A DNA stretch of 64,000 bases from IMG/VR virus record IMGVR_UViG_3300003877_000001, positions 186,001 to 250,000 of that record; one strand, 5' to 3'. The position numbers and the translations under genes were made by a program. This document shows positions 5,400-47,256 of this stretch, one piece after another. The notes beneath the pieces are model-generated. The model was not told where the DNA came from. It worked only from the letters and a program-made list of their open reading frames with translations, and ran no database searches. Each line of letters begins with the position of its first letter. The stretch's first letter is position 1.

Positions 5400-5427
5400 G
5401 TAACCTTTAGGGTGTCCTAAACGTATA
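5400..5427 (+). promoter_or_regulatory. Phage ECF-type promoter GTAACC-N16-CGTATA with palindromic spacer; further + copies at 5957, 7806 (palindrome) and 6456, 10255, 11527 (no palindrome)
   Basis: GTAACC TTTAGGGTGTCCTAAA CGTATA upstream of a gene start; motif recurs about 19 times in correct orientation. Confidence 0.8.
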
Positions 5428-5481
5428 ACTAAAAGAATAATATTGAAACAAGTAAAAATAAATTTTTAAGGCATTAAAATT

Positions 5482-5967
5482 ATGGGATATACACATTATT
5501 GGACTTCGAAAGTAGTAAGCGAAGATAAGTTTAAAAAGTTTGCAGCTACTTGTAAGAAATTATATAAAGCATTACCAGATACTAGCGAAACTGCTAGTGG
5601 TTGTTATTCAGATGATGAAATAGTAATTTGTGGTGGTAATGGGAAAGGAAAACCATTGTTCAGAAATGATGAAGTTTGGTTTAACGGAGATGATAAAAGA
5701 GGTCTTGAAGCTTTTTGTATCGAACTAGAGGATAAAGATTATAATTCTTGTAAAACAGAAAGAAAACCCTATGACTTACTAGTTGTAGCCTGCTTAATTG
5801 CAGCACATGAAATTTTAGGGTATGAAATTACAAGTGATGGAGATTTTGAAGATTGGAAACTAGCAATAAATTATTATCTTCGTACATTATATACTAAGAT
5901 GCCAAACGATGAAGCAATTAAATTAATTTTACCAGAATTCATATATAAAGAATATTGTAACCTTTAG
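5482..5967 (+). CDS. Conserved hypothetical phage protein
   Basis: MGYTHYW start, CKTERKPYD motif. Confidence 0.75.
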   Translation: MGYTHYWTSKVVSEDKFKKFAATCKKLYKALPDTSETASGCYSDDEIVICGGNGKGKPLFRNDEVWFNGDDKRGLEAFCIELEDKDYNSCKTERKPYDLLVVACLIAAHEILGYEITSDGDFEDWKLAINYYLRTLYTKMPNDEAIKLILPEFIYKEYCNL

Positions 5968-6014
5968 GATGTCCTAAACGTATAAGTAAAAAACAAAGAC
6001 TAAAAGAAATTATT

Positions 6015-6308
6015 ATGGAACTAAAACATATTATTGATTATCGTTCTATTCACAATATTCTGATAGAGCCAATGAATCAAAAGGAATTAGCTGACAATGT
6101 ACGTAAAGATGGTAGTGTTCAAGCTAAAGTTCTAGTATCATTTGAAAGTATTCTAGCAAATAATATTGATGACTTAAATGATGACGTATCCGAAAAGATT
6201 ACTGGCTCTATCTCAGGATTAACAGATATCAGCTATTCAGTTGCAGGTAGAACAACTAATAACGAATTAATTCTGAAAGTAACAGGAGTACCTGAACTGG
6301 AAGACTAA
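6015..6308 (+). CDS. Hypothetical protein
   Basis: ORF after promoter 5957. Confidence 0.7.
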   Translation: MELKHIIDYRSIHNILIEPMNQKELADNVRKDGSVQAKVLVSFESILANNIDDLNDDVSEKITGSISGLTDISYSVAGRTTNNELILKVTGVPELED

Positions 6309-6414
6309 CAATGTCCAGCTTGACTAGCTGGTAAAATATTTAAGAATACTTTTCTAGGGGAAGGACTAATCAATGTCCATTCGTAGTACCCTAAGAATTG
6401 TTTTTGTTTAAAAT

Positions 6415-6445
6415 CGGGGGAGAGGTGTCTCCCCCATATTTTTTT
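6415..6445 (+). terminator. Intrinsic terminator-like hairpin
   Basis: GGGGAGA-GGTG-TCTCCCC followed by T-rich tract. Confidence 0.6.
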
Positions 6446-6507
6446 CACAATGTACGTAACCTTATTCATTTATATACGTATATACTATTACACAAAACAA
6501 AAACATT

Positions 6508-6921
6508 ATGAATTTTGAATTAAGAAAAATTAAGTACTTCGATGCAATGTCCAAAGAAACTCCTTGCTTTACAGCAGAGATATGGGAGAATGGTAAACAC
6601 GTAGCTGACGTTGAGAACGATGGTCATGGTGGTGGTAATATGGTACACAACATACATGGTGTTAATACCTATAAAGACGTAGCTAAGTTCGACAATATGG
6701 ACGTTGAAGCAAATATATTTGGTATGGTATGGGAAGACTTTGATGTGAAGAGATTACAAACTAAAAATTGGGTTTTGAAAAAAGATGATAAAATATATAC
6801 CGCTAAATTTCCAATGTCTGTTTCAAAAATAAAGAAACATAGTGATTTTGAAAATTGGAAACAAACTCAAATTGCTAACCATATTAGTCATGGATATCAA
6901 GTCTTAAACCGAAATCTTTAA
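6508..6921 (+). CDS. Hypothetical phage protein
   Basis: ORF with leader; ENDGHGG motif. Confidence 0.7.
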   Translation: MNFELRKIKYFDAMSKETPCFTAEIWENGKHVADVENDGHGGGNMVHNIHGVNTYKDVAKFDNMDVEANIFGMVWEDFDVKRLQTKNWVLKKDDKIYTAKFPMSVSKIKKHSDFENWKQTQIANHISHGYQVLNRNL

Positions 6922-7001
6922 TTAAAAATAAAATAAATCACATTCCATTTGGATTTGTGATTTATTCTTTTTACCTTTGAATTACACTAAACAAAAACAT
7001 T

Positions 7002-7295
7002 ATGATGAATCACATGGATGAACGAAATAGAACTGGTAGTGCATTTCGTAATGCAGAAAATCAAGCAAGAATAGACGAGTACGATCAAGGACTGTTCCTG
7101 CACTTAGGTATAGATACAGCTAACCTAACACAGAATCAGGTAGATACAATCCTGATACCTTCTCACGCACCTGAAAACTATATGTGTGATGGTGAGATAA
7201 CATCTAAGCAAGCTGAAACTCGTTGGTTTAAGCAACTGGTACAATCAGGACTTAAAACAAAAGATGTAGCAAGAGCAATGAAATTAGTACGATAA
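7002..7295 (+). CDS. Hypothetical phage protein
   Basis: ORF with promoter and leader; APENYMCDGE motif. Confidence 0.7.
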   Translation: MMNHMDERNRTGSAFRNAENQARIDEYDQGLFLHLGIDTANLTQNQVDTILIPSHAPENYMCDGEITSKQAETRWFKQLVQSGLKTKDVARAMKLVR

Positions 7296-7311
7296 TCTTT
7301 AATTAAAAATT

Positions 7312-7617: not shown

Positions 7618-7877
7618 ATTAAGAATTATGAGAGAGTATTTTATAGACTTTATTACTTCAGATGGTATTAATAGTCAACATGAAAAAATGGTAATAATTT
7701 TAGAAGAGGATGAAATTCTATCTAATGAATTATTAATTAAGAAATTTCAATCAAAAAGAAATACTACTTTAAAAGTATATATTTCTGATATAAAAAGAAT
7801 TTAATGTAACCTTTAGGATGTCCTAAACGTATAACATAATACGATACACAATTAATTATTCACTAAATCTCAATTAG

Positions 7878-10196
7878 ATGAAATTAGAAAAACAATTAAA
7901 TTCGAAAAACATTCAGTCAACTGGTACAGTTACTGCAATGAAATTAGATGAAGATGCTCACTCAACTATCTTCGAAATTTTTACTAGTGGTTTATACTCC
8001 GATCCTATTGGTAGTATCATTAGGGAAATAACATCAAACTGTTTTGACTCACATGTTGAAGCAGGTAAAGACAATCCTAAAAATCCTGTTGTTGTTAAGT
8101 TAACCAATGAGGTTTCAGGCACGTTCATATCTTTTATAGATAAAGGTGTAGGAATGTCTCCCGATAGAGTACACAACATCTATGGTACTTACTTCAAATC
8201 AACTAAGAACCAAACAAACGATCAAATTGGTGGTTTCGGTTTAGGTGGTAAAACTCCATTAGCTTATACTGATAGTTTCTTTCTTATCACACGTTTCGAA
8301 GGTGTAGAATACATCTACAATATCTTTATGGGCAATGATAGTCCAATGGTAGAATTGATGTCGCAGGAAACCACTAAGAAAGTTAATGGTAGTGAAGTAA
8401 AGATACTTATTAAACCTAACGACCTTACAGCTTTTGAAAAGAAAACATTACGTCAATTGTACTACTTCGAAAACATAGTGTTTGAAGGTTTTTCAGATTA
8501 TTATGTAACCAATGATTATACAATTGCCAAAGGTGATACATTTCTTTATAGAGGTGATACATACTCTAGAAGTATGCACGTTTGTTTAGGTAAAGTAGCC
8601 TATCCTATAAACTTTGAAGCACTGGATGTTGAAGAGTCTGATTATAACTTACCTGTTGCTATTAACATTGAAATTGGTGAGTTAGACAATGGTGGTGTAA
8701 CACGTTCAAGAGAAGAACTTAAATACACTGATAAGAATAAGAAGATCATCATAAACAAGATGAAAGCTGTTAAAGCAGAGTTGATGGAATTATTGTCTAA
8801 ACAACTTGACAATGTACAAACCATGCAAGACTATTATAAGGTTATAGATAATCTTGGTGAACTTCGTCTTGGTGATAAGGTATTGAATGTTGATAGCATA
8901 GATAAAAACGATGTTGTCTTTCCTAACTTCAAATACAATGATTTGAAGATGCCTAAGATAGGTGACTTGGTTACTACTTTCTACAACAAGAAAATGTTTG
9001 GTAAGAAAGAAAGTACTAGGTATGGTTATGGAAATTACAAAGGTACTTTTGAATCAATGAATGAAAAAGATAACGTATATTTTGTTGATGGTGAATTTAA
9101 AAGAGTTGTTTTAAAGCAATCATATTTACAATGGAAAAGTGATAGATTTTTTCTTCATACTCCAATTGAATTTACTGAAACTGGTATGGCTATCCTAAAG
9201 AAAGAACTAGGATTAACTACTTCTAAAGAAATTCCTTTTACTAAGAAGCAAATAGCAGCTAAAGAAAAAGCTAAAAAGAAAGCAGAAGATAAGGGTGAAT
9301 TTTACGTGATGGGTGATTTGTTTAATATAAGAACCATTAATGTAATTCCTAAAGCCAAAGGTGAGAAGTTAATTGCTGACTTACAAAAAGATGTTCATGC
9401 CTTAATGGTTAAACATGCTAAGAACTACGATGATTTAGTAGTACCTGATGATTACATTGCTCTTAGAAAGCAGAATAGAATGTCCGCAACTGTTCTTAAA
9501 ACTGGTATTCCTGTTAAAGATAAAGGTTACTACGGTTACAGAACCAAATTGAAGATGGAAGATTTTGTTAATCACAATGGTAAAATCTACTACGGTTTTG
9601 CAGATGATAGTTACGCACTTGAAAATGGAAGTAGTATTTTCGATGAAATTAGTGGTAGTGAAAACAAATCTAAAATAAATAGATATGGTGATAATGATAC
9701 TAAAGGTACAATGTTCATTCAAATATCTAAAGGTAATGAGAAGTACTTAAAGATGCTTGGTAAGAAAGCTGTACACATTAATTACTTCTACCAAACTTAT
9801 GTATCACGTAAAATTGATATGATTGTACAAAACAAAACCTATGCAAAAGCAGAAGAATTGTTTAATGAGAATGTACTGGGTGTTTTTAATAAAAGTATCT
9901 TTAAACAAATTGATGAAGATATTTACTCTATGGCTTGTAAAGTTAATGATAGTCTTGAAAGTCATAAGGTGTTCCACTACATTAGTACAAGTACAATACT
10001 GAACAAACTTAAAATTGATTTAGATGATGTACAGGTGGAGTTCAAACATAAAGAAGAACTTGAAAAACTAACTAAGATTAGTAATGGTTGTAGAGATAGA
10101 CTGAAATGGATTAGTTTTCCTTGGGAATTAAATCCTGAAACAGAAAATGCTGATAAAGAATTAATTGAGATGGTGAATTTGTGTATCGACAAGTAA
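7878..10196 (+). CDS. rIIA: RIIA-like protein (N-terminal GHKL/HATPase domain)
   Basis: LYSDPIGSIIREITSNCFDSH, DKGVGMS, STK..TNDQIGGFGLGGK; adjacent to an rIIB-like gene. Confidence 0.85.
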   Translation: MKLEKQLNSKNIQSTGTVTAMKLDEDAHSTIFEIFTSGLYSDPIGSIIREITSNCFDSHVEAGKDNPKNPVVVKLTNEVSGTFISFIDKGVGMSPDRVHNIYGTYFKSTKNQTNDQIGGFGLGGKTPLAYTDSFFLITRFEGVEYIYNIFMGNDSPMVELMSQETTKKVNGSEVKILIKPNDLTAFEKKTLRQLYYFENIVFEGFSDYYVTNDYTIAKGDTFLYRGDTYSRSMHVCLGKVAYPINFEALDVEESDYNLPVAINIEIGELDNGGVTRSREELKYTDKNKKIIINKMKAVKAELMELLSKQLDNVQTMQDYYKVIDNLGELRLGDKVLNVDSIDKNDVVFPNFKYNDLKMPKIGDLVTTFYNKKMFGKKESTRYGYGNYKGTFESMNEKDNVYFVDGEFKRVVLKQSYLQWKSDRFFLHTPIEFTETGMAILKKELGLTTSKEIPFTKKQIAAKEKAKKKAEDKGEFYVMGDLFNIRTINVIPKAKGEKLIADLQKDVHALMVKHAKNYDDLVVPDDYIALRKQNRMSATVLKTGIPVKDKGYYGYRTKLKMEDFVNHNGKIYYGFADDSYALENGSSIFDEISGSENKSKINRYGDNDTKGTMFIQISKGNEKYLKMLGKKAVHINYFYQTYVSRKIDMIVQNKTYAKAEELFNENVLGVFNKSIFKQIDEDIYSMACKVNDSLESHKVFHYISTSTILNKLKIDLDDVQVEFKHKEELEKLTKISNGCRDRLKWISFPWELNPETENADKELIEMVNLCIDK

Positions 10197-10309: not shown

Positions 10310-11497
10310 ATGAATTTAATATTTGGAAACAAAGTTGGAACTAAAGTTAATCTGTTTATTAACGGTACACTTCATTCCAAAGAGTGTGGCACTGATGAAG
10401 GTGCTAATGTGTTCTTCAAAGAAATACTTAAAGTAAAAGCTGATCCTACTGATGAAAATGTAGATGGTCTTTATGTATTATTAAATAAGAATATTCGCAT
10501 TGCGAAAATGGCTGGTTTTGAATATGATGTTAAAACTGGTGAAACGTTCATGGATGGATTTAATACTCCTGTTCCTGAATTGCTTGTTGAAACTATTAAG
10601 GATTACCTAGATAATAACTTTCCAATTGAAAGTATTACTAACTTTTGGAAGCTGTTAATGGCTAATCCTGATCATAGAGTTAGAGAAGATTTATTTAAGT
10701 TCATTGCAACTCATGACTTCTCATTAACCGAGAAAGGTTATATGATTGTCTATAAGACTGTTGATTACATGAACATGAATACCAACGATGTTGCTTCATT
10801 CGTTTCTAATGCTTACCTGAAAGTACGTAAGGATTGGGGAACTTCTGCAAGTAAATATGTTGTGTATAAAAACTTCACAGAAGAAATTGGTGAAGATTTT
10901 GAATTAAAACTTACAAAGAAAGTTACCTTTAACAAATGGGATGTTGAAGCTAAAGGAGTAAAGTTAGTGGGCAACTTGAATGATCTACAAAAGAACCTTG
11001 ACAATTTGATAGAAGATAATAGTTCAGTCTTTACTGATCTACATACTCATAAGATGGAGATTAAACTTGGTGAACCTGTTAAGTTCGAAAGAACTGAATG
11101 TGATTCTGATCCTACAATTGATTGTTCTTATGGTTTGCATGTTGGTGCAACTAATTATGTACAGAGATTTGCTAATAGTGATTCAGTTGTACTTGTTTGC
11201 TTGGTTAATCCAATGAATGTAATGGCTGTACCACAATACGACCATAGTAAAATGAGAGTATGTGAGTACTACCCATTTGCACTTGCAACCTTTGAAGATC
11301 GTAAGATTGATATTATCGAGCAGAAATTCTTCGAGTACGATTATGTATCTCATGAAGAAGAAGAATTGAAACTGTTACTTGCTTCGAAAGAAGAAGATGT
11401 AAGAGAACGTTCTTATAATGCTCCCGAAGATGAAAGGGATTATGACGAGTACTTGACCATCCTAGAAGCTAGAGTTATTGATCTAGCAGGTGAATAG
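10310..11497 (+). CDS. rIIB: RIIB-like protein
   Basis: NFWKLLMANPD, DLFKFI...LTEKGYMIVYK, CSYGLHVG, VNPMNVMAVP..KMRVCEY. Confidence 0.88.
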   Translation: MNLIFGNKVGTKVNLFINGTLHSKECGTDEGANVFFKEILKVKADPTDENVDGLYVLLNKNIRIAKMAGFEYDVKTGETFMDGFNTPVPELLVETIKDYLDNNFPIESITNFWKLLMANPDHRVREDLFKFIATHDFSLTEKGYMIVYKTVDYMNMNTNDVASFVSNAYLKVRKDWGTSASKYVVYKNFTEEIGEDFELKLTKKVTFNKWDVEAKGVKLVGNLNDLQKNLDNLIEDNSSVFTDLHTHKMEIKLGEPVKFERTECDSDPTIDCSYGLHVGATNYVQRFANSDSVVLVCLVNPMNVMAVPQYDHSKMRVCEYYPFALATFEDRKIDIIEQKFFEYDYVSHEEEELKLLLASKEEDVRERSYNAPEDERDYDEYLTILEARVIDLAGE

Positions 11498-11580
11498 GAT
11501 AGCCTAAAATATATCATCCCCTTCTTGTAACATGGAAGGGGATTTTGTCGTATAATATAATATAAGAAAAACAATTAATT

Positions 11581-12111: not shown

Positions 12112-12591
12112 ATGAATAAGATTAACTATGTAACTGGCGATGCTACTAACCCTCAAAGTGACGGCTTTAAAGTAATAGTGCACGTGTGTAATAACATTGG
12201 AGCATGGGGTGCAGGTTTCGTTATGGCACTGAGTAAGAAGTGGGATCAACCTGAACGTGAATATAGAGAGATGAACCACCGTGACTTAGGTATGATCGAT
12301 CTTGTGCAGGTTCAGGACGACATTGCTATATGTAATCTAATAGGTCAAGAAGGGACGATCAAACGTAATGTAACCCGTAACCTTCCACCAGTAAGATACG
12401 TAGCTATTGAGAAGGGTCTTCAAGAACTAGTCGCCATTAATTCTTATAGACATCCTAATGACAAACTATCTGTCCATATGCCAAGGATTGGTTCTGGACT
12501 TGCAGGTGGTAACTGGAAGATCATCGAGACTATCATAGAAGAAACTCTATGTGCAGCAGGTATTGAAGTAACAGTATACGACCTGCCATAG
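12112..12591 (+). CDS. Macro domain protein (Poa1p/DarG-like ADP-ribose processing)
   Basis: GDAT, VHVCNNIGAWGAGF, MPRIGSGLAGGNW. Confidence 0.9.
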   Translation: MNKINYVTGDATNPQSDGFKVIVHVCNNIGAWGAGFVMALSKKWDQPEREYREMNHRDLGMIDLVQVQDDIAICNLIGQEGTIKRNVTRNLPPVRYVAIEKGLQELVAINSYRHPNDKLSVHMPRIGSGLAGGNWKIIETIIEETLCAAGIEVTVYDLP

Positions 12592-12793
12592 GACATCCTA
12601 AATGAAAAACTCTCATGGGTGTGAGAGAATTATAAACTTTTAATTAATAATATTATGATAATAGGATTAATAATATTACTACTACTATCAGGTAAGATAA
12701 TTCATAACCTAATTAAGATTGAAAGAATTCATATAAACATTAAATCAATCATGGAAGAAACTCAAAAAAAAATCAATAACTTTAAATAAAAAT

Positions 12794-13177
12794 ATGACAA
12801 AACCAAATTTAAATATACCTAATCATACTGAAGAGTTAATGAACATCCTTACACTAAGTAAGAAGTCCTATGATAACTATTTATATGATAAGACCCTTGG
12901 ACATGTAACCTCAAGGAAACGTAAAACGTATAAGTATATCTTTGAGACTTATCTCTATGCAGTAGCTGATCTATCACTGAAAGTGAATGCTATCCAGAAA
13001 GACTTAGAGAACCACTACGCTAGGACGTACAAAGACTCACCAGCATTAGGTAATAAACTATACTATGAAGAGTACTTCGATCTACATAAAAAATATGATA
13101 AGGTGAAACGTTTCATCTGGAAAGCAATCTTTAAAATAGATGGAAACGAAAATATCCAACCAGATATTCTTATTTAA
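12794..13177 (+). CDS. Hypothetical protein
   Basis: ORF with A-rich leader. Confidence 0.65.
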   Translation: MTKPNLNIPNHTEELMNILTLSKKSYDNYLYDKTLGHVTSRKRKTYKYIFETYLYAVADLSLKVNAIQKDLENHYARTYKDSPALGNKLYYEEYFDLHKKYDKVKRFIWKAIFKIDGNENIQPDILI

Positions 13178-13232: not shown

Positions 13233-13382
13233 CTATTTGTCTACAATGTCCAACCTCATGATCACAATGTACATCATATTGTCCATGATAACATAGGATA
13301 GTCTTAACATTTCATTAACGAATCAATTCGTACCATATTGTATCATTATTAACACATTATTCTCCGCTAATGAAAAAACCCA

Positions 13383-14167
13383 TAGGACATCCTACGGGTT
13401 TAATCATTCCAAACATGCAAGTACGTTTTCGTACAATACAAACATACAAATAAAAAAAGTCATAAGCAAGAGAAGATGGGATTATTATTTTTAACTAAGA
13501 ATGTTAATACTCGTTGCTTACGACTAAGAGTGGACACCTAAAAATAAATACCCACACATTTCAAAACAATCTTAATTAAGGATATTGCTAGGGACATTGA
13601 TGTCCCGAACACCACATTGTCCAATCCATTAGACAACCCACATTGTACACTCTCATAGGATAGCCTACATAGTAATTGCAATAACTATCATAGCAACCAG
13701 TGCTATATAAATTATTGCTTTTCCATAGGATGTCCTAATTTTAGTTCATCATATATAATACATATCCCATACCAAAAACGTAACTCGTTGTTCCTATGGA
13801 ACTTAACTTTAGGATGTCCTAAGTAATTCCCATTATTGGAAGTTCTTTGTCCCATAATGGGACAAGACATGACGAATTTCATGGTCTTAAATTATTAGAG
13901 AATCGGCTTCGGGCATTTCTACCCTTTGTTGAGAAGCAAGTAAATTATTATGTTTATTTAGGTTATCCTAGCCTGACATTTTTAATTAAGAATATATAAT
14001 TTTTTATAAAATCGAGTTTGAAATTTTATAAAAGAGATTTTTAGTACATGTAGCGACCCAAAAGTGGGTGAAAGTGGTAGGATGTGTTTAATTGTGGTGT
14101 AGAATTAAAAATTTTATGTTATTTTGTTGTTTTATTTATATTTAAATACTCTTTTTAGGATGTCCTA
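13383..14167. repeat. Cluster of TAGGA-NN-(T/G)CCTA palindromes in a non-coding region
   Basis: Copies at 13383, 13656, 13726, 13810, 13959 (variant), 14156; also 11495 and 12589 overlapping TAG stop codons. Confidence 0.8.
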
Positions 14168-14270
14168 AAAGGAACAAAACAAAGGTGTTTTTAATAAAAA
14201 TGGAACATGAAAGAACCATAAAAGTACTACTTCATTTCTACATTAGTAGTTGTTAGGTCAGGGTAATTTA

Positions 14271-14693
14271 GTTGTGATCACCTTACAAAATGTGATAATA
14301 ACCAACCTTGTGCTCACGGTGATGTTTTATTTGACTTGTTGTGATCACCTTACAAAATATGATAATAACCAACAGAGTAGGTTTTATTTTGATAAGCAAG
14401 TAAGTTGTGATCACCTTACAAAATATGATAATAACCAACATATTCCTATTGTTATTATTGTTGTGATCACCTTACAAAATGTAATAATAACCAACCTATC
14501 TTATATACCAACATCTCTTGCCGAGGTTGTGACCACCTTACAAAATATAATAATAACCAACTCCAAGAGCCAACATTCGCAACCACGTACTGTTGTGATC
14601 ACCTTACAAAATATGATAATAACCAACGAGGATGTAGAGTTGGATTATTACCGCTTAGTTGTGATCACCTTACAAAATATGATAATAACCAAC
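14271..14693 (-). CRISPR. CRISPR array: 7 x 36-nt repeats, 6 spacers (31, 30, 20, 30, 30, 30 nt)
   Basis: Plus-strand consensus GTTGTGATCACCTTACAAAATATGATAATAACCAAC starting at 14271, 14338, 14404, 14460, 14526, 14592, 14658 with unique spacers; GTTG...CAAC ends; - orientation inferred from the adjacent gene and repeat-family similarity. Confidence 0.97.
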
Positions 14694-14919: not shown

Positions 14920-16515
14920 TCAAGAGTTTATATATTTATTTTTAATATTAATTGCAGCATTAAAATCTGCATTATCTTCATGACCACATTTAGTACATTT
15001 AAAATTTGATTGATTAGTTCTATTATTAGAATCTATATTACCACAAACAGAACAAGTTTGTGAAGTATATGCAGGATCAATAAGAATTACTTCTTTACCA
15101 AGTTCTTTAGCTTTATATTCTAATTGGGTTTTAATTGTATTCCAACCAATATCTAGTATAACTCTATTAAAGTTCTGTTTAGATTTACTACCTTTAATAG
15201 TCATATTTTTTATATTAAGGTCTTCAAGAACAAAAGTATTATTATTTTTATTTTTGGTAAGTGTTGAAGTTATATTATGTTGTTTATTATTTCTAATATT
15301 AGAAATTTTAGTATTTATTATACCTAATTTATGTTTTATTCTTTTATATGAATTAGTTAAATAAAAATCTATATCTGTTTTATTTTTTTTATAATAGTCA
15401 TATTTTTTATTAAGTATAGTAGATAGTTTTCTTTTTTCTTCAGCATATTTTAATAGAACATCAAATCTATTTGCAAATATTGGATTATTAAAATCATTAA
15501 TATTTGAAGTTGTTATAGGTCTTTCAACACCTAAATCAATTCCAATGGTTGTTTTATCATTAGTGTGTTTAATTGAATAATTTTCAATATTGGTAATTAC
15601 CTGTATAGATATGAAGTATTGATCTTGCGAATTTTTAGATATAGTATAAGAATTTAATTTAAAAACATTAACATCATTCCACATATTAATAAACAATTTA
15701 TTATGACAAACCATTTTAATTTTTTTTAATTTAGGAATATTAATAGTAACGAATTTACTACCATTACTTATTATTTTAAATGGGGAAATATTACCATTAT
15801 AATTATATAGTATTTGACCAGTAAAAGAGTATGTTGAATTTCTATTTTTAAATTTAGGATAACCTGAATGTGTTTTCCATATTTTAGTAAAAGCATTATC
15901 TAAATTTTGTAATGTATATGATCTAGTAGTAGCATCAACATTTTTTAAGAATCCATATTTAAGGATACCATTTTCATTAAGTTCATTAGAGTTAGCCAAT
16001 ACAGTTAGTTCTTTAGATGCTTTATATTTATTAAAATATAAATCATTATCTTTCATATATTTTCTTCTAGCAACACCAATATCCTTAATTAAAGATTTAT
16101 AGTAGAGCATATGATCTATATCACCAGACTCATTAATATATTTAAAGAAAGAAACAATAAGAGTATCTTCAGTATCTAATTCTATTTTATATTTTTTTAA
16201 ATAGTTGTTAAACTCTTTAGAATCATTTAAATACTTATTTGTAAATTCATCTGAAATATCTTGTTGTTGTCTTAGAAAAGTATTATAGATAAAATTAGAG
16301 GTTCTAACAGCATCATCAAAGTATTGTATTTGTTTTTTATTAGGATAAATCCTAAACTTCAAAGCCTTATTTATTTTTTTTAGTTTAAATGATTTAATAT
16401 CATCTAATATAATATTATCATTTGTTAGAGAAGTTCCAATACCCTTTTTATTTACTTTGATAATATTGTGTATTGTGTTATTTTGTAAAGTAACAATATC
16501 ATTAGGTTGTAGCAT
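14920..16515 (-). CDS. tnpB: CRISPR-associated TnpB/Cas12f-like RNA-guided nuclease (531 aa)
   Basis: KALKFRIYPN (HTH_OrfB), GYPKFK, RuvC-I IGIDLG, RuvC-II VLEDL, Zn finger CSVC...CTKC, RuvC-III NADFNAAINI. Confidence 0.9.
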   Translation of the reverse strand: MLQPNDIVTLQNNTIHNIIKVNKKGIGTSLTNDNIILDDIKSFKLKKINKALKFRIYPNKKQIQYFDDAVRTSNFIYNTFLRQQQDISDEFTNKYLNDSKEFNNYLKKYKIELDTEDTLIVSFFKYINESGDIDHMLYYKSLIKDIGVARRKYMKDNDLYFNKYKASKELTVLANSNELNENGILKYGFLKNVDATTRSYTLQNLDNAFTKIWKTHSGYPKFKNRNSTYSFTGQILYNYNGNISPFKIISNGSKFVTINIPKLKKIKMVCHNKLFINMWNDVNVFKLNSYTISKNSQDQYFISIQVITNIENYSIKHTNDKTTIGIDLGVERPITTSNINDFNNPIFANRFDVLLKYAEEKRKLSTILNKKYDYYKKNKTDIDFYLTNSYKRIKHKLGIINTKISNIRNNKQHNITSTLTKNKNNNTFVLEDLNIKNMTIKGSKSKQNFNRVILDIGWNTIKTQLEYKAKELGKEVILIDPAYTSQTCSVCGNIDSNNRTNQSNFKCTKCGHEDNADFNAAINIKNKYINS

Positions 16516-18557: not shown

Positions 18558-18564
18558 ATTAAGT

Positions 18565-18592
18565 TATACGTATAGGATATCCTAAAGGTTAC
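18565..18592 (-). promoter_or_regulatory. Phage ECF-type promoter with palindromic spacer; further - copies at 21657, 22564, 25101, 27005, 28539, 47076 (palindrome) and 17714, 31186, 32572, 44621, 44974, 45799 (no palindrome)
   Basis: Reverse complement GTAACC TTTAGGATATCCTATA CGTATA just upstream of a start codon. Confidence 0.8.
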
Positions 18593-21649: not shown

Positions 21650-22105
21650 AATATCTTATACGTATAGGATCTTCTAAAGGTTACGATTTATTTTTATAAT
21701 ATAATAAAATAACATTTAAATATGAAAACATTAACGCTAAATTCAAACTAGACGTTAAAGGGTTTGAATATTCAGGATTTGTTTTCAATAAATATAGAGA
21801 ATAGCATATAAATATTAAAGATATAAGTGATATTAATATTCTAAAATTTTTCATTTTTCTTCTTTTAAATTAAGATTCTGGATAATATTCTTTTATTTCT
21901 TTGCAGAAGTTGGGATATAAATCACGTTCATCTAAAAACGTCATAGTATCGTCAAAATCATATTCACCACCATAGACAGAGTAACCACTATATTTTACTT
22001 GTATGGTATGATAGTGCATCGGTTATAATATCAATATTCTTAAAGTCTTTAAGGAATTTGATAGTAAAGTGTATTATATTTTTATGAGTTACCTTCTTCA
22101 TAATT

Positions 22106-22480: not shown

Positions 22481-22628
22481 TTGTTGTTATAATTTGAAAT
22501 ATTGTTTTATTATCTTTAACTGGTACTTTTTCGTATTTGTAGGTAGTGATTTTCATATTATCTTATACGTTTAGGACACCCTAAAGGTTACGATAAATAT
22601 ATTATTTTATATGATGTACTTTTATATT

Positions 22629-25093: not shown

Positions 25094-25255
25094 ATTATCT
25101 TATACGTATAGGATATCCTAAAGGTTACAACCAAAGATATAATATAATACATAAACATCCCCAAGCAAGAATACCATATCCAATTTCCAAGCATCTAGGT
25201 ATATCTCTATGTGATGTTTGAATGGTTAATAATCTATAAAATCCAATTATTTTTT

Positions 25256-26997: not shown

Positions 26998-27265
26998 ATT
27001 ACCTTATACGTTTAGGATATCCTAAAGGTTACTCATATTTATATTTCTTTTTCATTTTAGCAACAAACTCTTCAATATCATCACAAATTTCTTCACGTTC
27101 ACCATGAGGAAGTTGATTTAAAATATCTTCTAACAATACCAGTTCTTGTTTGGCAACAACATAATCTACATCCATTCCCATAATTATATTTTTAATTTAA
27201 AGTGTCTAAAGGTTGTTTACTGCGATCTTATTGGTTATTTCAAGGTTTCAGACTTCCAACCACTA

Positions 27266-28213: not shown

Positions 28214-28531
28214 TTATTTATTATCTTCAACAAATTTGTTAACTTTATTTGTTAACTTGTTTAGTAAGTCAATACTTATATTGTTTTTAATTGAGTTGAT
28301 TGTAATAGTACAAGCAACAACATTTGAATCAATATATCCAATATTATTATCAACTCTATCTATTGACCTACGATTGGTGCTATTATTAAATTTAACACCA
28401 GTATAATAACAAGTTTTTCTTGTCATTAACTGCTTCATTTTATTAAAGCTAATTCCATACTGATATCCTCTAGTTGTAGCACTCTGTCTAGTTGCTACCA
28501 TTTTATATGCAATATCTATGTCTTTTACCAT
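28214..28531 (-). CDS. HNH/His-Me finger endonuclease-like protein
   Basis: CYYTG...SIDRVDNNIGY...NVVAC...N. Confidence 0.75.
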   Translation of the reverse strand: MVKDIDIAYKMVATRQSATTRGYQYGISFNKMKQLMTRKTCYYTGVKFNNSTNRRSIDRVDNNIGYIDSNVVACTITINSIKNNISIDLLNKLTNKVNKFVEDNK

Positions 28532-29385
28532 AATCTATTATACGTTAGGGTGTCCTAAAAGGTTACAATTCTTTATATTCAGTTAAATAATCAAGTAATT
28601 GTTTCTTTAATGTTTCAATTATAGTATTTAGAATTTCCATATTACCACCATGTCTAGTTAGAATAGTACCATCACCAGAATTATCACTATGTCTACCAAT
28701 AGTTATCGAATATAAACCATCATCATATTGATTTTCAGGGGTTCTTTTTTTATGTTCTTTTTTTATGTTCTTTTTCTGTGTTCGATTTAAATAATGTTAA
28801 ATCTTCTAAACTTTCTTTAGTTGTCTTAATTATTTTTTTTAAAACATTTGCTCTTTCTAATTTTATATCATCCATAATTTTTAATTAAATATTATCCATT
28901 CTTTTTTTCTCACCACAACTTCGAAACCCTTTTCATCATAACCTACAAACTTTTCACCATCCCATGTACCTTCTATAAGTATCTTCATAGCTTTTCCATG
29001 TGCCTTTGGATTAGGATTAGGTATTACTGTTTCGAACCATGCTTTTTCTTTTTTCATTCTATTCTATTCTTCAAATCCTAATTCAATAAAAAGCCAGATC
29101 ATCCAAATAGGAAAAAATATAAACTCTATAATTGTTTTTAAATTTATTGTAGTATGATCTATGGCTAACATCATTATGGCAATTCCATAGGATATGCCAC
29201 AATAAACCGAAATAACTACTATTAACCAAGTTGCCATTATTTTTCTGCTTTAAAGTAAAGAATAATACCTAGAACGATCGAAGGTATTGCTATAAGCCAG
29301 AACATTAGTTCATTAATCTCATAAGGCATGTTACTTCCAATAAATGAACCATATACTGCACTAAATAGGTGACTTCTTTTAATTT

Positions 29386-43516: not shown

Positions 43517-43517
43517 A

Positions 43518-44359: not shown

Positions 44360-44360
44360 G

Positions 44361-44594: not shown

Positions 44595-44663
44595 AATGTT
44601 TTTCGTTTGATTTACTATATTATACGTAAAAATTAATCTAAGGTTACAGTATCTACACTGTTT

Positions 44664-44942
44664 TTACTTTTTCTTTACACTATCAGCATCACTTACAGCA
44701 TCACTTACAGCATCATTTACTTTTGCAATACCATCTTTAGCTTCTTTGGCTACTACTTCAACATTTTCTTTACCAAATGCATTGTAAAGAAGTTTAGGTT
44801 TTATTAAATATGTGCCTGTACCGATAACAATCACAACAATAAGTAATTTGATTAGATTACCGACCATATTCCAGAGGAATTTCAAAAGTAAGTACCCTAC
44901 TATTACCACACTGATTAACATTAAAATTTCATTAGTTTCCAT
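44664..44942 (-). CDS. Membrane protein
   Basis: Two TM helices; 12-bp tandem repeat encoding DAVS. Confidence 0.7.
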   Translation of the reverse strand: METNEILMLISVVIVGYLLLKFLWNMVGNLIKLLIVVIVIGTGTYLIKPKLLYNAFGKENVEVVAKEAKDGIAKVNDAVSDAVSDADSVKKK

Positions 44943-45254
44943 ACTTTTTATTTTATAGTTTGATTTGTTATACTATACGTGAATTACCAATTAAAGGTTA
45001 CGATTTTATTAATATTATTTGAAGTAATTTTATTGGGCTAATGATTATAAATACAAATCTACTGAAAGTAGACGATTTTTCTTTTGATGATTCCTTTGTT
45101 AGGAAAAAATAACATCCCATTCCAATAATTAAATATGTTGCGATTAATATCATATATATATTCATAATTTTTTTTGTTTAAAGAAAAGTAGTTTATTACC
45201 ATAACACCTCAAACACACACACAAAAATCTTTGTATTATGTTGAAAAGTTATAT

Positions 45255-45791
45255 TTAATTCAATTTTATTTTATAAATATGATTATAGTTTTTATCAATT
45301 GGATTACCACCTTTCCCTTTTCTCTTCTTATCTAGAATAATTTCGGTTTCTTTAAAAAACTCTTTCATCTTAAAAGTATAGATTACATCAATTGGGTCAT
45401 TTTTTTTTGGTAATATCTTCACTATTTGCTTTGATTCAATATCATATTCATAAACAGCAACATAATTACCAAAATAAATTTTATTGTTAAATCCTTCTTG
45501 GCGTGGTAGCATATATTGGGTAAACCATCTAGTTCCTCTCCAATATACATTCTTATCATTTAATGTATATGGTAAAAGATCAATAGTATTATATAAATTT
45601 TTTGTACCACCATAATATATATATATTGTGGTATGGTAAGCATTTGCTTTCAGAGTATCAGTTTCAGTATAGATATCTTTTTGATTTCTTATCATCACTA
45701 AATCAAAATTACCTACTTCTCTCTTTACTTGAGAAAAACCTAAAATGTTTAGTGTTAATAATACGATTAATATTGTTAATATACGTTTCAT
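45255..45791 (-). CDS. Secreted hypothetical protein
   Basis: N-terminal signal peptide. Confidence 0.65.
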   Translation of the reverse strand: MKRILTILIVLLTLNILGFSQVKREVGNFDLVMIRNQKDIYTETDTLKANAYHTTIYIYYGGTKNLYNTIDLLPYTLNDKNVYWRGTRWFTQYMLPRQEGFNNKIYFGNYVAVYEYDIESKQIVKILPKKNDPIDVIYTFKMKEFFKETEIILDKKRKGKGGNPIDKNYNHIYKIKLN

Positions 45792-45822
45792 AATTCTATA
45801 TACGTATATTGTTTAGAATAGG

Positions 45823-46089
45823 TTACAAATTTCTAAAATATGATCTTACTTCTTTATCGATGTCTTTATCGCAGAAACATATATAATATCCAGAATCTTC
45901 AATTATTTGGGCAATCCTATCTAATTCGGTTTTATGCTTCTTTAGATAATCACCACTAAGTATTATCTTTTTTCTCCATTTAGCCATTTTAAGGATTTCA
46001 TCATATTCTTGTATGATTTCATTAACAGCCTCAATGGGGTGTGAAGTTGTCATAGCATTTTTTAGTTTCTTAATTAAAGCATTATCCAT
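45823..46089 (-). CDS. Hypothetical protein
   Basis: ORF on coding strand. Confidence 0.6.
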   Translation of the reverse strand: MDNALIKKLKNAMTTSHPIEAVNEIIQEYDEILKMAKWRKKIILSGDYLKKHKTELDRIAQIIEDSGYYICFCDKDIDKEVRSYFRNL

Positions 46090-46144
46090 AACGATAAATA
46101 CTTTTTTTAAAACATAAGAAAGCCACTTTTCAGTGGCTTTCTTT

Positions 46145-46969
46145 TTAAAATAAATCTATATTTTTTCTTAAATCTAGATATATTTTAAGATGATCCTTTT
46201 TTTTATTAAAGTCAGCAGCATTACGGATTTTCCACCCATCGACTTTCATAAGATATCTTCCTTGTTTCATAAAGACTCTTTCATCACCCTTTTCTATTAG
46301 TGATTTACCCACATCATTATTAAGACGTTTATCAATTGGTTCTTTAACAACCATTCGACCTCTTTTCTTTCCAGCATCTAAATCATTCCAATTAATACCT
46401 TTCTTCCAAGACATTTCCTGCATTTCATTAGCAGACTTCTTATATAATTCTTTATGTGAATAAAGAGATTGTGCAACCATTGAAATTGAATTTCTTACAG
46501 CATCTTGTTGTCTCGCAATGAAATAATTAATTACTTCAGTTCGTTCTGGTATTGTAAATACTCTTGAATCAAAAAATGCTAGATTATCATTTTTTAGATT
46601 AGGTTTTTTTGCAACAATTCTATTAAAATATCCAGTTGCTATTGATGCTGATATTGAACTCATTTTTTGAATATTACCATCAAACCATGCATCAGTAGAT
46701 AATTTATCATAATCTTGTAAAACTAAACTAATTTCATCTGATTGAACATATGCCATAACCGCACCTTGAATATTTTTACATAGTTCAAGTGCTGTTTCGT
46801 CCATAACTTCCATTAAATTACTATCAAACGGTTTTTCAAAGTTTTTAGTATAAGTATGAAAACTTTTCCCATCACAACGTATGATAGTATTAGTTCTTCT
46901 TGGAAGATAGTATCTTGTTCTATCTTCATAATTAACTTTCATTCTATTATTTATACTATCTTTTTTCAT
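46145..46969 (-). CDS. thg1: tRNA(His) guanylyltransferase Thg1-like protein (3'-5' polymerase)
   Basis: IIRCDGKSFH, PFD, YVQSDEISL, FDGNIQK, FDSRVF, RQQDAVRNSI. Confidence 0.93.
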   Translation of the reverse strand: MKKDSINNRMKVNYEDRTRYYLPRRTNTIIRCDGKSFHTYTKNFEKPFDSNLMEVMDETALELCKNIQGAVMAYVQSDEISLVLQDYDKLSTDAWFDGNIQKMSSISASIATGYFNRIVAKKPNLKNDNLAFFDSRVFTIPERTEVINYFIARQQDAVRNSISMVAQSLYSHKELYKKSANEMQEMSWKKGINWNDLDAGKKRGRMVVKEPIDKRLNNDVGKSLIEKGDERVFMKQGRYLMKVDGWKIRNAADFNKKKDHLKIYLDLRKNIDLF

Positions 46970-47256
46970 ATTTTCTATTTAAATAAATTTTACTTTCAAA
47001 ATATATGTGATCCAATACTTTATTGGCATTTTTACCTTGAAGGAACTACCATTATATAAATGTATCATACTACAATATACGTTTAGGATATCCTAAAGGT
47101 TACAAAACAACTTTTAATATTTTACTTCCATTAGAATTTAGACTTAAATCAAATTCTTTATAAATTCCATTCATTAAGATAAGCCAACAAAGGATCATTA
47201 ATATTTAAAATATCATCACAATTTTTTATTGGTTTAATGTATAAAGGAGATTCCAT

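What the first reader, a model, noticed from the sequence alone, without database searches (positions are those of the whole stretch)
5400..47103. A 16-bp palindrome fills the -35/-10 spacer in 10 promoters and also occurs free
Seen: in 10 promoters the spacer is TTTAGGA(TG/TA)TCCTAAA or a close variant, while the other 9 have unrelated spacers. The core TAGGA-NN-(T/G)CCTA also overlaps the TAG stops of rIIB (11495) and the macro gene (12589) and occurs six times in 13383-14167 without promoter boxes. Known: MerR-type regulators and many repressors bind dyads between -35 and -10. Inference: an unidentified phage DNA-binding protein controls a sub-regulon. Alternatively the 28-bp unit is a recombination hotspot that shuffles promoter-gene modules.
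Basis: partly seen in the sequence, partly recalled or inferred. Interest (0 to 1): 0.6.

Follow-up and report, generated by a model that had tools for sequence, protein, structure and literature searches.

The report
Operator-like dyad inside phage ECF promoters
A 16-bp symmetric DNA motif fills the spacer of about a quarter of the phage-sigma-factor promoters of an uncultivated 326-kb jumbo phage and also sits at gene ends; it looks like the binding site of a still unidentified regulator that controls a subset of phage genes.

Summary
The core TAGGANNKCCTA occurs at 16 places in the window against 0.07 expected. It fills the spacer of 10 promoters, overlaps the TAG stops of rIIB and a macro-domain gene, and occurs six times in 13383-14167.

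The "-35/-10" boxes are not sigma-70 type. They form an ECF-sigma-type promoter, GTAAC-N16/17-CGTAT, found about 43 times in the 325,854-bp phage genome. The phage encodes two ECF sigmas, one at window 2762-3289. The host is probably a Bacteroidota.

Several results favour a site read on double-stranded DNA by a symmetric dimer:
- It is the most over-represented inverted repeat in the genome.
- The arms TAGG/CCTA never vary, and 88% of sites have a pyrimidine-purine central step.
- It shows no strand preference and keeps a fixed register in 17-nt spacers.
- Sequences flanking the promoters are unrelated.
- Sites are conserved at matching positions in relatives. Sister lineages keep the promoters and the non-coding region but lack the dyad, through same-length substitutions.

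No binder was found. MerR, Cro-like and Xis-like domains are absent. An NrtR/AraR-like regulator was tested and rejected.

Repression of a sub-regulon is inferred, not shown.

The parts
5400..5428 (+). ECF-type promoter with the dyad TTTAGGGTGTCCTAAA in its spacer; upstream of the 161-aa ORF 5482-5967
5957..5985 (+). ECF-type promoter with the dyad TTTAGGATGTCCTAAA. The TAG of the dyad is the stop of ORF 5482-5967. It drives the 97-aa ORF 6015-6308.
7806..7834 (+). ECF-type promoter with the dyad, upstream of rIIA (7878-10196). The synteny break with relative L018 falls at its upstream edge.
18564..18592 (-). ECF-type promoter with the dyad (TTTAGGATATCCTATA in promoter orientation). The ATG lies 8 nt after CGTAT, so the mRNA is probably leaderless.
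21656..21684 (-). ECF-type promoter with a degenerate dyad (TTTAGAAGATCCTATA); leaderless arrangement
22563..22591 (-). ECF-type promoter with the dyad TTTAGGGTGTCCTAAA; leaderless arrangement
25100..25128 (-). ECF-type promoter with the dyad; drives the 140-aa ORF 24671-25093, whose orthologue in L035 is also under a dyad promoter
27004..27032 (-). ECF-type promoter with a perfect dyad TTTAGGATATCCTAAA; drives the 173-aa ORF 26476-26997
28538..28566 (-). ECF-type promoter with the dyad shifted 1 nt towards the -10 box; drives a 105-aa basic protein with a degenerate HNH, Srd-like domain (28214-28531)
47075..47103 (-). ECF-type promoter with a perfect dyad; the first long ORF downstream is a Thg1-like tRNA-His guanylyltransferase (46145-46969)
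2653..2688 (.). Free dyad TTTAGAATATCCTAAA plus a half site TTTAGGATAT. It starts 12 nt after the stop of ORF 1865-2641 and about 75-110 nt upstream of the sigma gene's ATG. It is conserved in L018, L021 and L024 and absent in L022.
2762..3289 (+). Phage ECF-type sigma factor gene, the presumed reader of the GTAAC-N16/17-CGTAT promoters. It is expressed from a host-type (TAnnTTTG-like) early promoter.
11493..11508 (.). Free dyad AATAGGATAGCCTAAA; its TAG is the rIIB stop. It starts 34 nt upstream of the -35 box (GTAAC, 11527) of promoter 11527-11555 and 8 nt before the terminator hairpin 11516-11543.
   Evidence: orthologous site L018 16593
12587..12602 (.). Free dyad CATAGGACATCCTAAA; its TAG is the stop of the macro-domain gene 12112-12591
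   Evidence: orthologous site L018 17959
13376..13401 (-). Intrinsic terminator hairpin on the - strand whose tip is the dyad at 13383. The lower stem shows compensatory changes among relatives. The hairpin, but not the exact core, is kept in the dyad-less lineage L040.
13654..13669 (.). Free dyad CATAGGATAGCCTACA in the conserved non-coding region. In relatives its TAG is the stop of a 30-aa membrane-peptide ORF on the - strand.
13724..13739 (.). Free dyad CATAGGATGTCCTAAT. Its CAT is the start codon (- strand) of the 30-aa ORF, which a 31-nt deletion has broken in the window.
13808..13823 (.). Free dyad TTTAGGATGTCCTAAG, conserved in L018, L043, L044 and L045; replaced by unrelated bases of the same length in L040
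13957..13972 (.). Free degenerate dyad TTTAGGTTATCCTAGC
14154..14169 (.). Free perfect dyad TTTAGGATGTCCTAAA at the right edge of the conserved non-coding region, next to the CRISPR-like array

Best explanation
The element is a lineage-specific 16-bp dyad. Its consensus is (T/C)(T/A)-TAGG-A-Y-R-T-CCTA-(A/T)A, and in promoters it reads TTTAGGAYRTCCTAAA. The genome is a 326-kb T4-like jumbo phage whose host is probably a Bacteroidota.

I read it as the operator of an unidentified homodimeric protein that binds double-stranded DNA. The proposed circuit is:
1. Early genes, including a phage ECF sigma factor (window 2762-3289), are read from host-type TAnnTTTG promoters.
2. That sigma then drives about 43 GTAAC-N16/17-CGTAT promoters.
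3. In 11-12 of these, nearly all within window 5.4-47.1 kb, the operator fills the 17-nt spacer exactly. A bound dimer would block the polymerase and switch this subset off, or gate it.
4. Copies at gene ends (upstream of the sigma gene, at the rIIB and macro stops, in the non-coding region) would act as roadblocks, as feedback sites, or as a sink for the protein.

Shown: the motif, its enrichment, its register in the spacer, its conservation, and its lineage-specific presence and absence.
Inferred: that a protein binds it, that the effect is repression, and the timing.

Because the promoter cassettes are repeated, they also serve as crossover points for gain and loss of genes.
For: 1. Enrichment: 16 sites against 0.07 expected. 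It is the top inverted repeat in an unbiased census of the whole genome.
2. Promoter class: AAC / CGT boxes with 16-17 nt spacing occur 43 times, and two ECF sigma genes are present.
3. Register: all 11 strict dyad promoters have a 17-nt spacer with the dyad in one register. The only exception is shifted by 1 nt.
4. Not hitch-hiking: spacer identity among dyad promoters is 0.82, while their flanks are at background (0.35-0.37, against 0.38-0.39 for other promoters).
5. Recognition of sequence, not of pairing: among 89 perfect-core sites in this genome and its relatives, the centre varies but the central step is pyrimidine-purine in 78 (88%, against 24% background). The exceptions are mostly coding coincidences. 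Arm variants are not compensated.
6. No strand preference: in promoter orientation, NTGT and ACAN centres are about equally common. This is expected for reading of duplex DNA, not for reading of an RNA loop.
7. Independence from promoters: free copies exist, and a full site plus half site upstream of the sigma gene is conserved in relatives whose sigma is 51-79% identical.
8. Lineage contrast: L040/L041 and L022/L023 keep the promoters and the non-coding region but have no dyad. The sites differ by substitution at equal length, not by insertion. A complete 362.6-kb relative has none.
9. Turnover: the promoter before the 66-aa gene carries the dyad in L034 but not in this genome.
10. Geometry: the half sites are 8-10 bp apart centre to centre, about one helical turn.
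Against: - No candidate binder was found. HTH_3, MerR_1 and HTH_17 are absent.
- A Pfam scan of 335 open reading frames (114 ORFs of 40 aa or more from window 1-48.5 kb, 221 ORFs of 45-230 aa outside the window) found only two sigmas and an NrtR-like regulator. A separate scan of promoter-proximal genes found a 545-aa Ros/MucR-GNAT protein. ORFs longer than 230 aa outside the window were not scanned as a set.
- The NrtR-like protein has its own canonical box elsewhere, and it is present in a complete genome that lacks the dyad.
- There are no RNA data, so promoter use, start sites and timing are untested.
- Genes behind dyad and non-dyad promoters show no clear functional split. RNA-repair genes occur behind both.
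- Several free sites sit exactly at gene ends, and one is the tip of a true terminator hairpin. This also fits a role in RNA.
Confidence: 0.5

Rival explanations
1. The dyad acts in RNA. The transcribed hairpin UUUAGG-NNNN-CCUAAA at cistron borders would be bound or cut by a phage protein (processing, 3'-end protection, or nut/boxB-like antitermination). Its presence in promoter spacers would then simply reflect the tight intergenic space.
For: - Many copies lie at gene ends or overlap stop codons.
- The copy at 13383 is the tip of a - strand intrinsic terminator with covarying lower stem.
- In the non-coding region, dyads flank a small - strand ORF at its start and stop.
- A small hairpin can form (-4 to -5.8 kcal/mol).
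- The phage is rich in RNA-repair and RNA-processing enzymes.
Against: - The arms are conserved as sequence, with no compensatory changes.
- Loop sequences occur in both orientations relative to transcription.
- The central step is constrained symmetrically.
- A fixed register between the -35 and -10 boxes in 11 promoters is not needed for an RNA element.
- The half site next to the sigma-gene dyad cannot form a hairpin.
- The hairpin is weak and has no U tract.
Confidence: 0.15
2. The primary role is recombination. The roughly 28-50-bp promoter-plus-dyad unit would be a mobile regulatory cassette, like the PeSLs of T4-type phages, kept because it mediates shuffling of promoter-gene modules.
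For: - The 161-aa gene (5482-5967) is present here and in L021 but absent in L018.
- L018's single promoter joins the left flank of copy 5400 to the right flank of copy 5957. This is what a crossover between two direct repeats would leave.
- Synteny with L018 resumes exactly at 7790-7798.
- PeSL cassettes play this role in T4-type phages (PMC2839356, PMC4122927).
Against: - Only the three + strand copies share extended homology (about 45-100 bp). The other copies have unrelated flanks.
- Free dyads have no promoter.
- Dyads appear and disappear by in-place substitution in otherwise aligned sequence.
- Non-dyad and host-type promoter cassettes are also repeated at module borders.
- Homologous recombination does not need dyad symmetry, invariant arms or a pyrimidine-purine centre.
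Confidence: 0.12
3. There is no trans-acting factor. The G+C-rich symmetric spacer would tune these promoters by itself, through DNA shape, stiffness or response to supercoiling, for the phage ECF sigma holoenzyme.
For: The other spacers are A+T-rich and variable, while the dyad adds a GG..CC core at a fixed place. All dyad promoters use the 17-nt spacing.
Against: This does not explain the free copies, the half site, the cluster in the non-coding region, or the strict symmetry. ECF sigma factors are not known to read the spacer (own knowledge).
Confidence: 0.07
4. The dyad is the operator of the phage's NrtR/AraR-like Nudix-winged-helix regulator (genome 133793-134458). This would tie the sub-regulon to ADP-ribose or NAD status during host NAD-depleting defence.
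For: - It is the only classical dimeric transcription factor recognised in the genome.
- Its match to BtAraR (5BS6) has E = 1e-42, and its Nudix signature is degraded, as in true regulators.
- In the BtAraR-DNA complex the two recognition helices lie about 30 A apart (PMC4666351), which fits the dyad's half-site spacing.
- A macro-domain gene ends in a dyad.
Against: - Family operators are 21-bp odd palindromes with a GT-N7-AC core (PMC2330246), or GTGT-N7-ACAC for AraR (PMC4666351).
- Such a box sits upstream of the nadM-Nudix gene here (genome 140290) and in L077.
- A complete relative encodes the regulator with almost the same recognition helix but has no dyad.
- In relatives the gene is linked to Nampt, Prs and NMNAT genes, its classical regulon.
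Confidence: 0.05

Closest known systems
Repressor operators that overlap a promoter (lambda CI/Cro, 434 and P22 c2 operators; P1 C1 with many dispersed operators)
   Same: A short dyad with half sites about one helical turn apart. There are many copies with conserved arms and a looser centre. They are placed where a bound dimer would exclude RNA polymerase, and they are dispersed over many transcription units.
   Different: The promoters are read by a phage ECF-type sigma, not by the host's main sigma. The dyad lies entirely inside the spacer. Further copies lie at gene ends and in a non-coding cluster. No cognate repressor gene is recognisable, and the phage looks strictly lytic (T4-like).
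MerR-family spacer operators
   Same: A dyad located between the -35 and -10 elements.
   Different: MerR promoters have over-long 19-20-bp spacers that the activator twists into register (own knowledge). Here the spacer is the normal 17 nt, and the genome has no MerR-family gene.
PeSL cassettes (promoter-early stem-loop) of T4-type phages (PMC2839356, PMC4122927)
   Same: Short repeated promoter-plus-palindrome units between small genes in variable regions of T4-like genomes. At least one indel and one synteny break are bounded by them.
   Different: PeSLs combine a sigma-70 early promoter with a terminator stem-loop beside it. Here the palindrome is inside the spacer of an ECF-type promoter, is not a terminator, also occurs alone, and most copies share no flanking homology.
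Phage-encoded sigma-driven middle/late transcription (phiEco32 gp36 and phage 7-11; PMC8948821, PMC12276001)
   Same: A lytic phage brings its own small sigma factor that redirects host core polymerase to a phage-specific promoter class.
   Different: In those phages, known control is through a protein that binds RNA polymerase (gp79). A DNA operator inside a subset of the sigma's promoters has not been described there, as far as I could find.
NrtR/AraR operators (PMC2330246, PMC4666351)
   Same: A palindromic site bound by a dimeric winged-helix regulator; the phage encodes a family member.
   Different: Family sites are 21-bp odd palindromes with a GT-N7-AC core. The dyad is even (16 bp) with TAGG/CCTA arms. 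The regulator occurs in a complete genome without the dyad.

Membership tests
ECF-sigma-dependent promoter (the frame that holds the dyad) | -35 element with an AAC motif and -10 element with a CGT motif, 16-17 nt apart (own knowledge: B. subtilis sigma-W TGAAAC-N16-CGTA, sigma-X TGTAAC-N17-CGAC) | tested here: met
   GTAAC-N16/17-CGTAT occurs 43 times in the genome, mostly just upstream of ORFs.
ECF-sigma-dependent promoter (the frame that holds the dyad) | A cognate group-4 sigma factor is available | tested here: met
   Two ORFs carry Sigma70_r2 plus r4_2 and are 175-193 aa long: window 2762-3289 and genome 260272-260475.
ECF-sigma-dependent promoter (the frame that holds the dyad) | Transcription starts 6-8 nt after the -10 element and depends on that sigma | not testable with these tools
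   No RNA run holds this phage.
Repressor operator overlapping a promoter | A dyad-symmetric site with conserved half sites about one helical turn apart, present in several copies | tested here: met
   The TAGG-N4-CCTA arms were required by the search pattern that defined the 89 sites, so their constancy there is not independent evidence. The central step, which was free to vary, is YR in 88% of them, and the flanks prefer TT/AA or CA/TG.
Repressor operator overlapping a promoter | A position that excludes RNA polymerase | tested here: met
   The dyad fills the 17-nt spacer in 11 promoters, in one register.
Repressor operator overlapping a promoter | A cognate DNA-binding protein, with binding demonstrated | tested here: inconclusive
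   No recognisable repressor was found in Pfam or PHROGs scans of 335 ORFs. Binding cannot be tested here.
MerR-type spacer operator | An over-long (19-20 bp) spacer that needs remodelling by the activator | tested here: not met
   Dyad promoters have 17 nt between GTAAC and CGTAT; other promoters have 16-17.
MerR-type spacer operator | A MerR-family regulator is encoded | tested here: not met
   PF13411 gives no match in the 326-kb genome. A host-encoded one cannot be excluded.
PeSL mobile regulatory cassette | Located at indel or replacement borders between related genomes | tested here: met
   The indel of 5482-5967 lies between two copies, and there is a break at 7790-7798.
PeSL mobile regulatory cassette | A composite of an early sigma-70 promoter and an adjacent terminator stem-loop, with homology along the whole cassette | tested here: not met
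   The promoter is ECF-type, the palindrome lies inside the spacer, its hairpin is weak (-4 kcal/mol) without a U tract, and the flanks of most copies are unrelated.
NrtR/AraR operator | A 21-bp odd palindrome with a GT-N7-AC core | tested here: not met
   The dyad is even and lacks the core. A canonical box lies elsewhere, at genome 140290 (PMC2330246).
Intrinsic terminator | A G+C-rich stem followed by a U tract | tested here: not met
   Only the copy at 13383 qualifies, because of its extra GGG/CCC stem and T run.
REP- or MITE-like mobile palindrome | Present as an insertion relative to empty sites | tested here: not met
   Sites with and without the dyad align base for base at equal length.

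The most novel reading that the evidence does not exclude
The dyad is the operator of a new, unrecognised family of phage transcription factor. That factor closes a three-tier cascade in Bacteroidota jumbo phages: host sigma-A early genes, then phage ECF-sigma genes, then a dyad-binding repressor. The repressor would switch off a subset of ECF promoters and feed back on the sigma gene. The whole layer would have been gained or lost in one phage lineage by in-place conversion of many spacers.
Probability: 0.3. Interest if true: 0.6.

Novelty: new variant of a known kind. Interest (0 to 1): 0.45.

Why it matters
Almost nothing is known about how jumbo phages of Bacteroidota time their gene expression.

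This locus gives a concrete circuit that can be tested: host-type early promoters, a phage ECF sigma with a clear promoter consensus, and a second layer marked by one sharply defined 16-bp operator.

Sister lineages keep the promoters but lack the operator. The cognate factor could therefore be found by comparing which genes are present in which lineages.

The operator and promoter pair could also be useful as orthogonal control parts in Bacteroidota.

The same cassettes illustrate how repeated regulatory sequences double as crossover points for exchange of gene modules.

Tried and rejected
**Close relatives by DNA.**
- Phage GenBank records gave no match.
- IMG/VR gave only a near-identical fragment, G001.
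- A looser promoter pattern in IMG/VR gave chance-level single hits.

**Known RNA families and tRNAs.** No tRNA and no Rfam family was found in the window or in the non-coding region.

**Expression data.** The only holders are DNA runs from one hydrothermal-vent study.

**Classical repressor families.** HTH_3, MerR_1 and HTH_17 are absent from the genome.

**NrtR/AraR-like regulator as the binder: rejected.**
- A canonical GTGT-N7-ACAY box lies at the nadM-Nudix gene.
- The regulator is present, with the same recognition helix, in a complete 362.6-kb genome that has zero dyads.

**67-aa basic early protein (452-655), conserved in dyad-bearing relatives.** The model is confident (pLDDT 90), but it is a beta-alpha fold, not a helix-turn-helix, and has no clear PDB match. 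The protein atlas gave nothing, and it has only 4 relatives in 1.84 billion representatives.

**105-aa protein under a dyad promoter (28214-28531).** Its PHROG hits are Srd-like and HNH-like. The motif reads as an HNH with the catalytic His replaced. The single-sequence model is poor (pLDDT 44), so nothing can be concluded.

**Other proteins considered.**
- The acidic 74-aa protein next to the sigma gene (pI 4.1) is not a DNA binder; it may target a sigma factor.
- The 258-aa Cys-rich protein upstream of the sigma gene is absent from its usual position in dyad-bearing L021.
- A Ros/MucR-GNAT protein of 545 aa (genome 75826-77463) was noted but not pursued. That family binds A+T-rich DNA (own knowledge).

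**Other searches.**
- Literature search for the motif strings found nothing relevant.
- Searching whole ENA/JGI records behind the loci was not possible.
- Complex prediction was not used, because no protein pair is claimed.

Full report
**What the window is.** The window is bases 186001-250000 of a single 325,854-bp virus record with 27.5% G+C. It comes from a hydrothermal-vent metagenome, and only DNA runs hold it. It encodes rIIA and rIIB, and its relatives carry the Pfam rIIB family.

Genes in window 1-5000 are preceded by boxes of the form TAnnTTTG and by an A-rich leader, ACACTAAAACAAAAACA..ATG, with no Shine-Dalgarno sequence. That is the signature of Bacteroidota sigma-A promoters and translation starts (PMC6847099, PMC9723704). 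The host is therefore probably a Bacteroidota. This is an inference from sequence signals only.

TAGGANNKCCTA occurs at 16 places against 0.07 expected, and the 16-mer with up to 2 mismatches occurs 15 times against 0.6 expected.
- 10 promoters with the dyad and 9 of the same class without it;
- overlap with the TAG stops of rIIB and of ORF 12112-12591;
- six copies in 13383-14167, five perfect and one with a mismatch.

ORF 12112-12591 is a macro domain by its match to solved structures. In an unbiased census of all inverted repeats with 5-6-nt arms and 0-11-nt gaps over the whole genome, TTTAGG-N4-CCTAAA and TAGGA-N2-TCCTA rank first. The other high scorers are tRNA T-arms (the tRNA genes lie near genome position 133,450).

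**The promoter frame.** The boxes are GTAAC(C)-N16/17-CGTAT(A). An AAC motif paired with a CGT motif at this spacing marks ECF-type sigma factors (own knowledge of B. subtilis sigma-W and sigma-X promoters). With strict boxes there are 43 such promoters in the genome, and 11 carry the dyad. A twelfth has a variant -10 box.

The phage encodes two ECF-size sigma factors, one in the window at 2762-3289. That gene sits behind a host-type promoter. This gives a plausible order: early host-driven genes, then the phage sigma, then the GTAAC..CGTAT genes. The order is inferred.

The general promoter consensus extends to GTAACCTTT...ACGTATA. The outer TTT and the last A of the 16-mer therefore belong to the promoter as well.

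**Arguments that the dyad is selected for itself.**
- Spacers of the 11 dyad promoters are 82% identical to each other. Their upstream flanks (35-37%) are no more alike than those of other promoters (38-39%). The spacer was therefore not simply copied along with a duplicated cassette.
- All dyad promoters use the 17-nt spacing and one register, with one copy shifted by a base.
- Copies exist without promoters.
- A full site followed by a half site (TTTAGGATAT) lies between the 258-aa gene and the sigma gene. It is kept in contigs whose sigma is 79%, 78% and 51% identical.
- Orthologous positions in relatives keep the dyad: before rIIA, at the rIIB stop, at the macro stop, and through the non-coding region.

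**Duplex DNA or RNA?**
- I collected 89 sites with the perfect TAGG-N4-CCTA core from this genome and its relatives. The arms were fixed by the search. The centre was free, yet its middle step is TG, CA or TA in 78 of them (88%), against 24% for such steps genome-wide. The exceptions are mainly coding coincidences, such as GGAATTCC at 12027, which also exists in a lineage without the dyad.
- When an arm or flank departs from symmetry, the partner does not compensate.
- Read in the direction of the promoter, centres of the form NTGT and their complements ACAN are about equally frequent.
- A symmetric constraint, no strand preference and no covariation are what a twofold-symmetric protein on duplex DNA would produce. 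They are not what a protein reading an RNA loop would produce.
- The RNA hairpin is weak (-4 kcal/mol) and lacks a U tract.
- The RNA reading is not excluded. Many copies sit at cistron ends. The copy at 13383 is the tip of a genuine - strand terminator whose lower stem covaries among relatives.

**The lineage contrast.** Contigs L040/L041 carry a homologue of the 127-aa protein at 57% identity, and L022/L023 carry a sigma at 44% identity. Both groups use the same promoter boxes. L040 aligns through the whole non-coding region, including its most conserved block. None of them has the dyad.

At each site the dyad-bearing and dyad-less sequences have equal length and differ by substitutions. A complete 362.6-kb relative with terminal repeats has no copy, while the reversed control pattern gives four per strand.

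There is also turnover within the dyad-bearing clade. The promoter of the 66-aa gene carries the dyad in L034 but not here. This pattern fits binding sites that evolve together with a lineage-specific factor. It does not fit a mobile inserted element.

**Search for the factor.** HTH_3, MerR_1 and HTH_17 are absent. I scanned 114 window ORFs and 221 ORFs of 45-230 aa from the rest of the genome against Pfam. The window set was also scanned against PHROGs. The only sequence-specific DNA-binding proteins these scans found are the two sigmas and an NrtR/AraR-like regulator. A separate scan of promoter-proximal genes found a 545-aa Ros/MucR-GNAT protein.

The NrtR-like protein (genome 133793-134458) matches BtAraR at E = 1e-42 and has a degraded Nudix signature. 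I tested it as the binder and reject it, for four reasons:
- Family operators are 21-bp odd palindromes with a GT-N7-AC core (PMC2330246, PMC4666351).
- Such a box (GTGT-N7-ACAY) lies just upstream of the nadM-Nudix gene, both here and in L077.
- In relatives the gene is linked to Nampt, Prs and NMNAT genes.
- The dyad-less complete genome encodes it with nearly the same recognition helix.

Two further candidates led nowhere. The 67-aa early basic protein folds confidently but is not a helix-turn-helix. The 105-aa degenerate HNH protein, which sits under a dyad promoter, could not be modelled. The factor remains unknown and could also be host-encoded.

**Recombination.** Against L018, the window carries an extra gene (5482-5967) flanked by dyad promoters at 5400 and 5957. 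L018's single promoter combines the left flank of the first with the right flank of the second. L021 has the gene. Synteny before rIIA resumes exactly at the promoter edge, 7790-7798. So these cassettes do mark module borders, as PeSLs do in T4-type phages (PMC2839356, PMC4122927). However, the host-type early cassettes are also repeated at borders, and most dyad promoters share no flanking homology. I take recombination to be a consequence of having repeated regulatory DNA, not the reason the dyad is kept.

**No clear functional split between the two promoter sets.**
- Dyad promoters drive rIIA, an RNA ligase (the single copy outside the window, at genome 136960), a Thg1-like enzyme and many small unknown ORFs.
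- Non-dyad promoters drive rIIB, a CCA-adding enzyme, a 2H phosphoesterase, NMNAT-Nudix and others.

The split is mainly positional: 10 of the 11 strict dyad promoters lie in window 5.4-47.1 kb.

**Verdict.** The most likely reading (about 0.5) is an operator for an unidentified dimeric DNA-binding protein that gates a subset of phage ECF-sigma promoters and probably feeds back on the sigma gene. An RNA-level role (0.15) and a primarily recombinational role (0.12) are the main rivals. It is a new variant of a familiar kind of element in an unexplored phage group. Interest is moderate.

Noticed in passing
window 14271-14693 (array) and 14920-16515 (- strand gene): A CRISPR-like array of seven 36-bp repeats (GTTGTGATCACCTTACAAAATRTGATAATAACCAAC). 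Five spacers are 30-31 nt and one is 20 nt. It lies next to a 531-aa TnpB/Cas12f-like protein (Pfam Cas12f1-like TNB, HTH_OrfB_IS605; PDB hits to Cas12f and TnpB). The spacers match nothing else in this genome or in the fetched loci. Relatives L044 and L040 lack the cassette at this position, so it is a recent gain of this phage.
   Followed up: partly
window 13445-13590, - strand: A block of about 140 nt is almost invariant among six lineages whose neighbouring proteins are only 57-80% identical. On the - strand it folds into a 13-bp hairpin followed by a 15-bp stem with a large loop and a run of seven U. This suggests a small RNA gene. There is no Rfam match.
   Followed up: partly
window 18557, 21649, 22556, 25093, 26997, 28531 (- strand ATGs); genome 136995, 108613, 149318, 165743, 169470: In 7 of the 11 strict dyad promoters and about 7 other ECF-type promoters, the start codon of a called ORF (30 aa or more) lies exactly 8-9 nt after CGTAT, so these mRNAs would be leaderless or nearly so; the dyad promoter at window 47103 also has an ATG at +8, but that ORF is shorter than 30 aa. 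Only about 5.5% of mRNAs are leaderless in Flavobacterium psychrophilum (PMC9723704).
   Followed up: partly
window 381-454, 652-727, 3529-3605, 6911-7005 and others: Repeated cassettes of about 70 bp, each holding a Bacteroidota-type promoter (TAnnTTTG) and a conserved A-rich leader. They match many places in relatives and sit between small early genes, as PeSL cassettes do.
   Followed up: partly
genome 133793-134458 and 140290-140310 (outside the window); L077 13618: The phage encodes an NrtR/AraR-family Nudix-winged-helix regulator. A candidate canonical operator (GTGT-N7-ACAY) lies upstream of its NMNAT-Nudix gene. In relatives the regulator is linked to Nampt and Prs genes. A phage-borne NAD-salvage regulon with its own ADP-ribose-type sensor may be worth a separate look.
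   Followed up: partly
window 13243-13272, 13600-13650; also 2514, 4134, 6094, 6308, 6447, 8809: A second recurrent motif, ACA(A/T)TGT(A/C)C: 8 copies against 1.3 expected. In relatives it forms tandem arrays with a period of 13-16 nt in the non-coding region. It also occurs next to, or inside the spacers of, some ECF-type promoters (L018 11635, L024 7862, L040 2571).
   Followed up: partly
window 13656-13740, - strand: Relatives encode a 30-31-aa hydrophobic peptide here, with a dyad at its start and another at its stop. In the window a 31-nt deletion has broken the frame.
   Followed up: partly
window 11516-11543; genome 77483, 159004; L022 promoters: Composite terminator-promoters. In some, the -35 box lies in the loop of a terminator hairpin (11516-11543). 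In others, the -35 box GTAACCTTTT is the descending arm plus T run of a hairpin AAAAGGTTRC...GTAACCTTTT.
   Followed up: no
window 3307-3531: A very acidic 74-aa protein (pI 4.1) lies immediately after the sigma gene. It is conserved at 69-85% identity in all dyad-bearing relatives seen. It could be an anti-sigma or a partner that acts on the host sigma.
   Followed up: no
window 12905-12933 inside ORF 12794-13177: A full ECF-type promoter sequence lies inside a coding region. It is conserved at the same place in L018 (18246) and L040 (10115).
   Followed up: no
window 28214-28531 and 48325-48501: Two small proteins carry an HNH-like motif in which the catalytic His is replaced (SIDRVDNNIGY...N). 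Their best PHROG hits are 'Srd anti-sigma factor' and 'decoy of host sigma70'. The first is the first gene behind a dyad promoter.
   Followed up: partly
window 31979-32542, 46148-46969; genome 136995-137627, 290256-291446 and others: A large set of RNA-repair and tRNA-repair genes: Thg1-like, several RNA ligases, 2H phosphoesterase, HAD-SAK, CCA-adding enzyme and Tpt1. Several of them (Thg1-like, one RNA ligase, 2H phosphoesterase, CCA-adding enzyme) are the first ORF behind ECF-type promoters. An Acb3-like CBASS inhibitor is also present.
   Followed up: no
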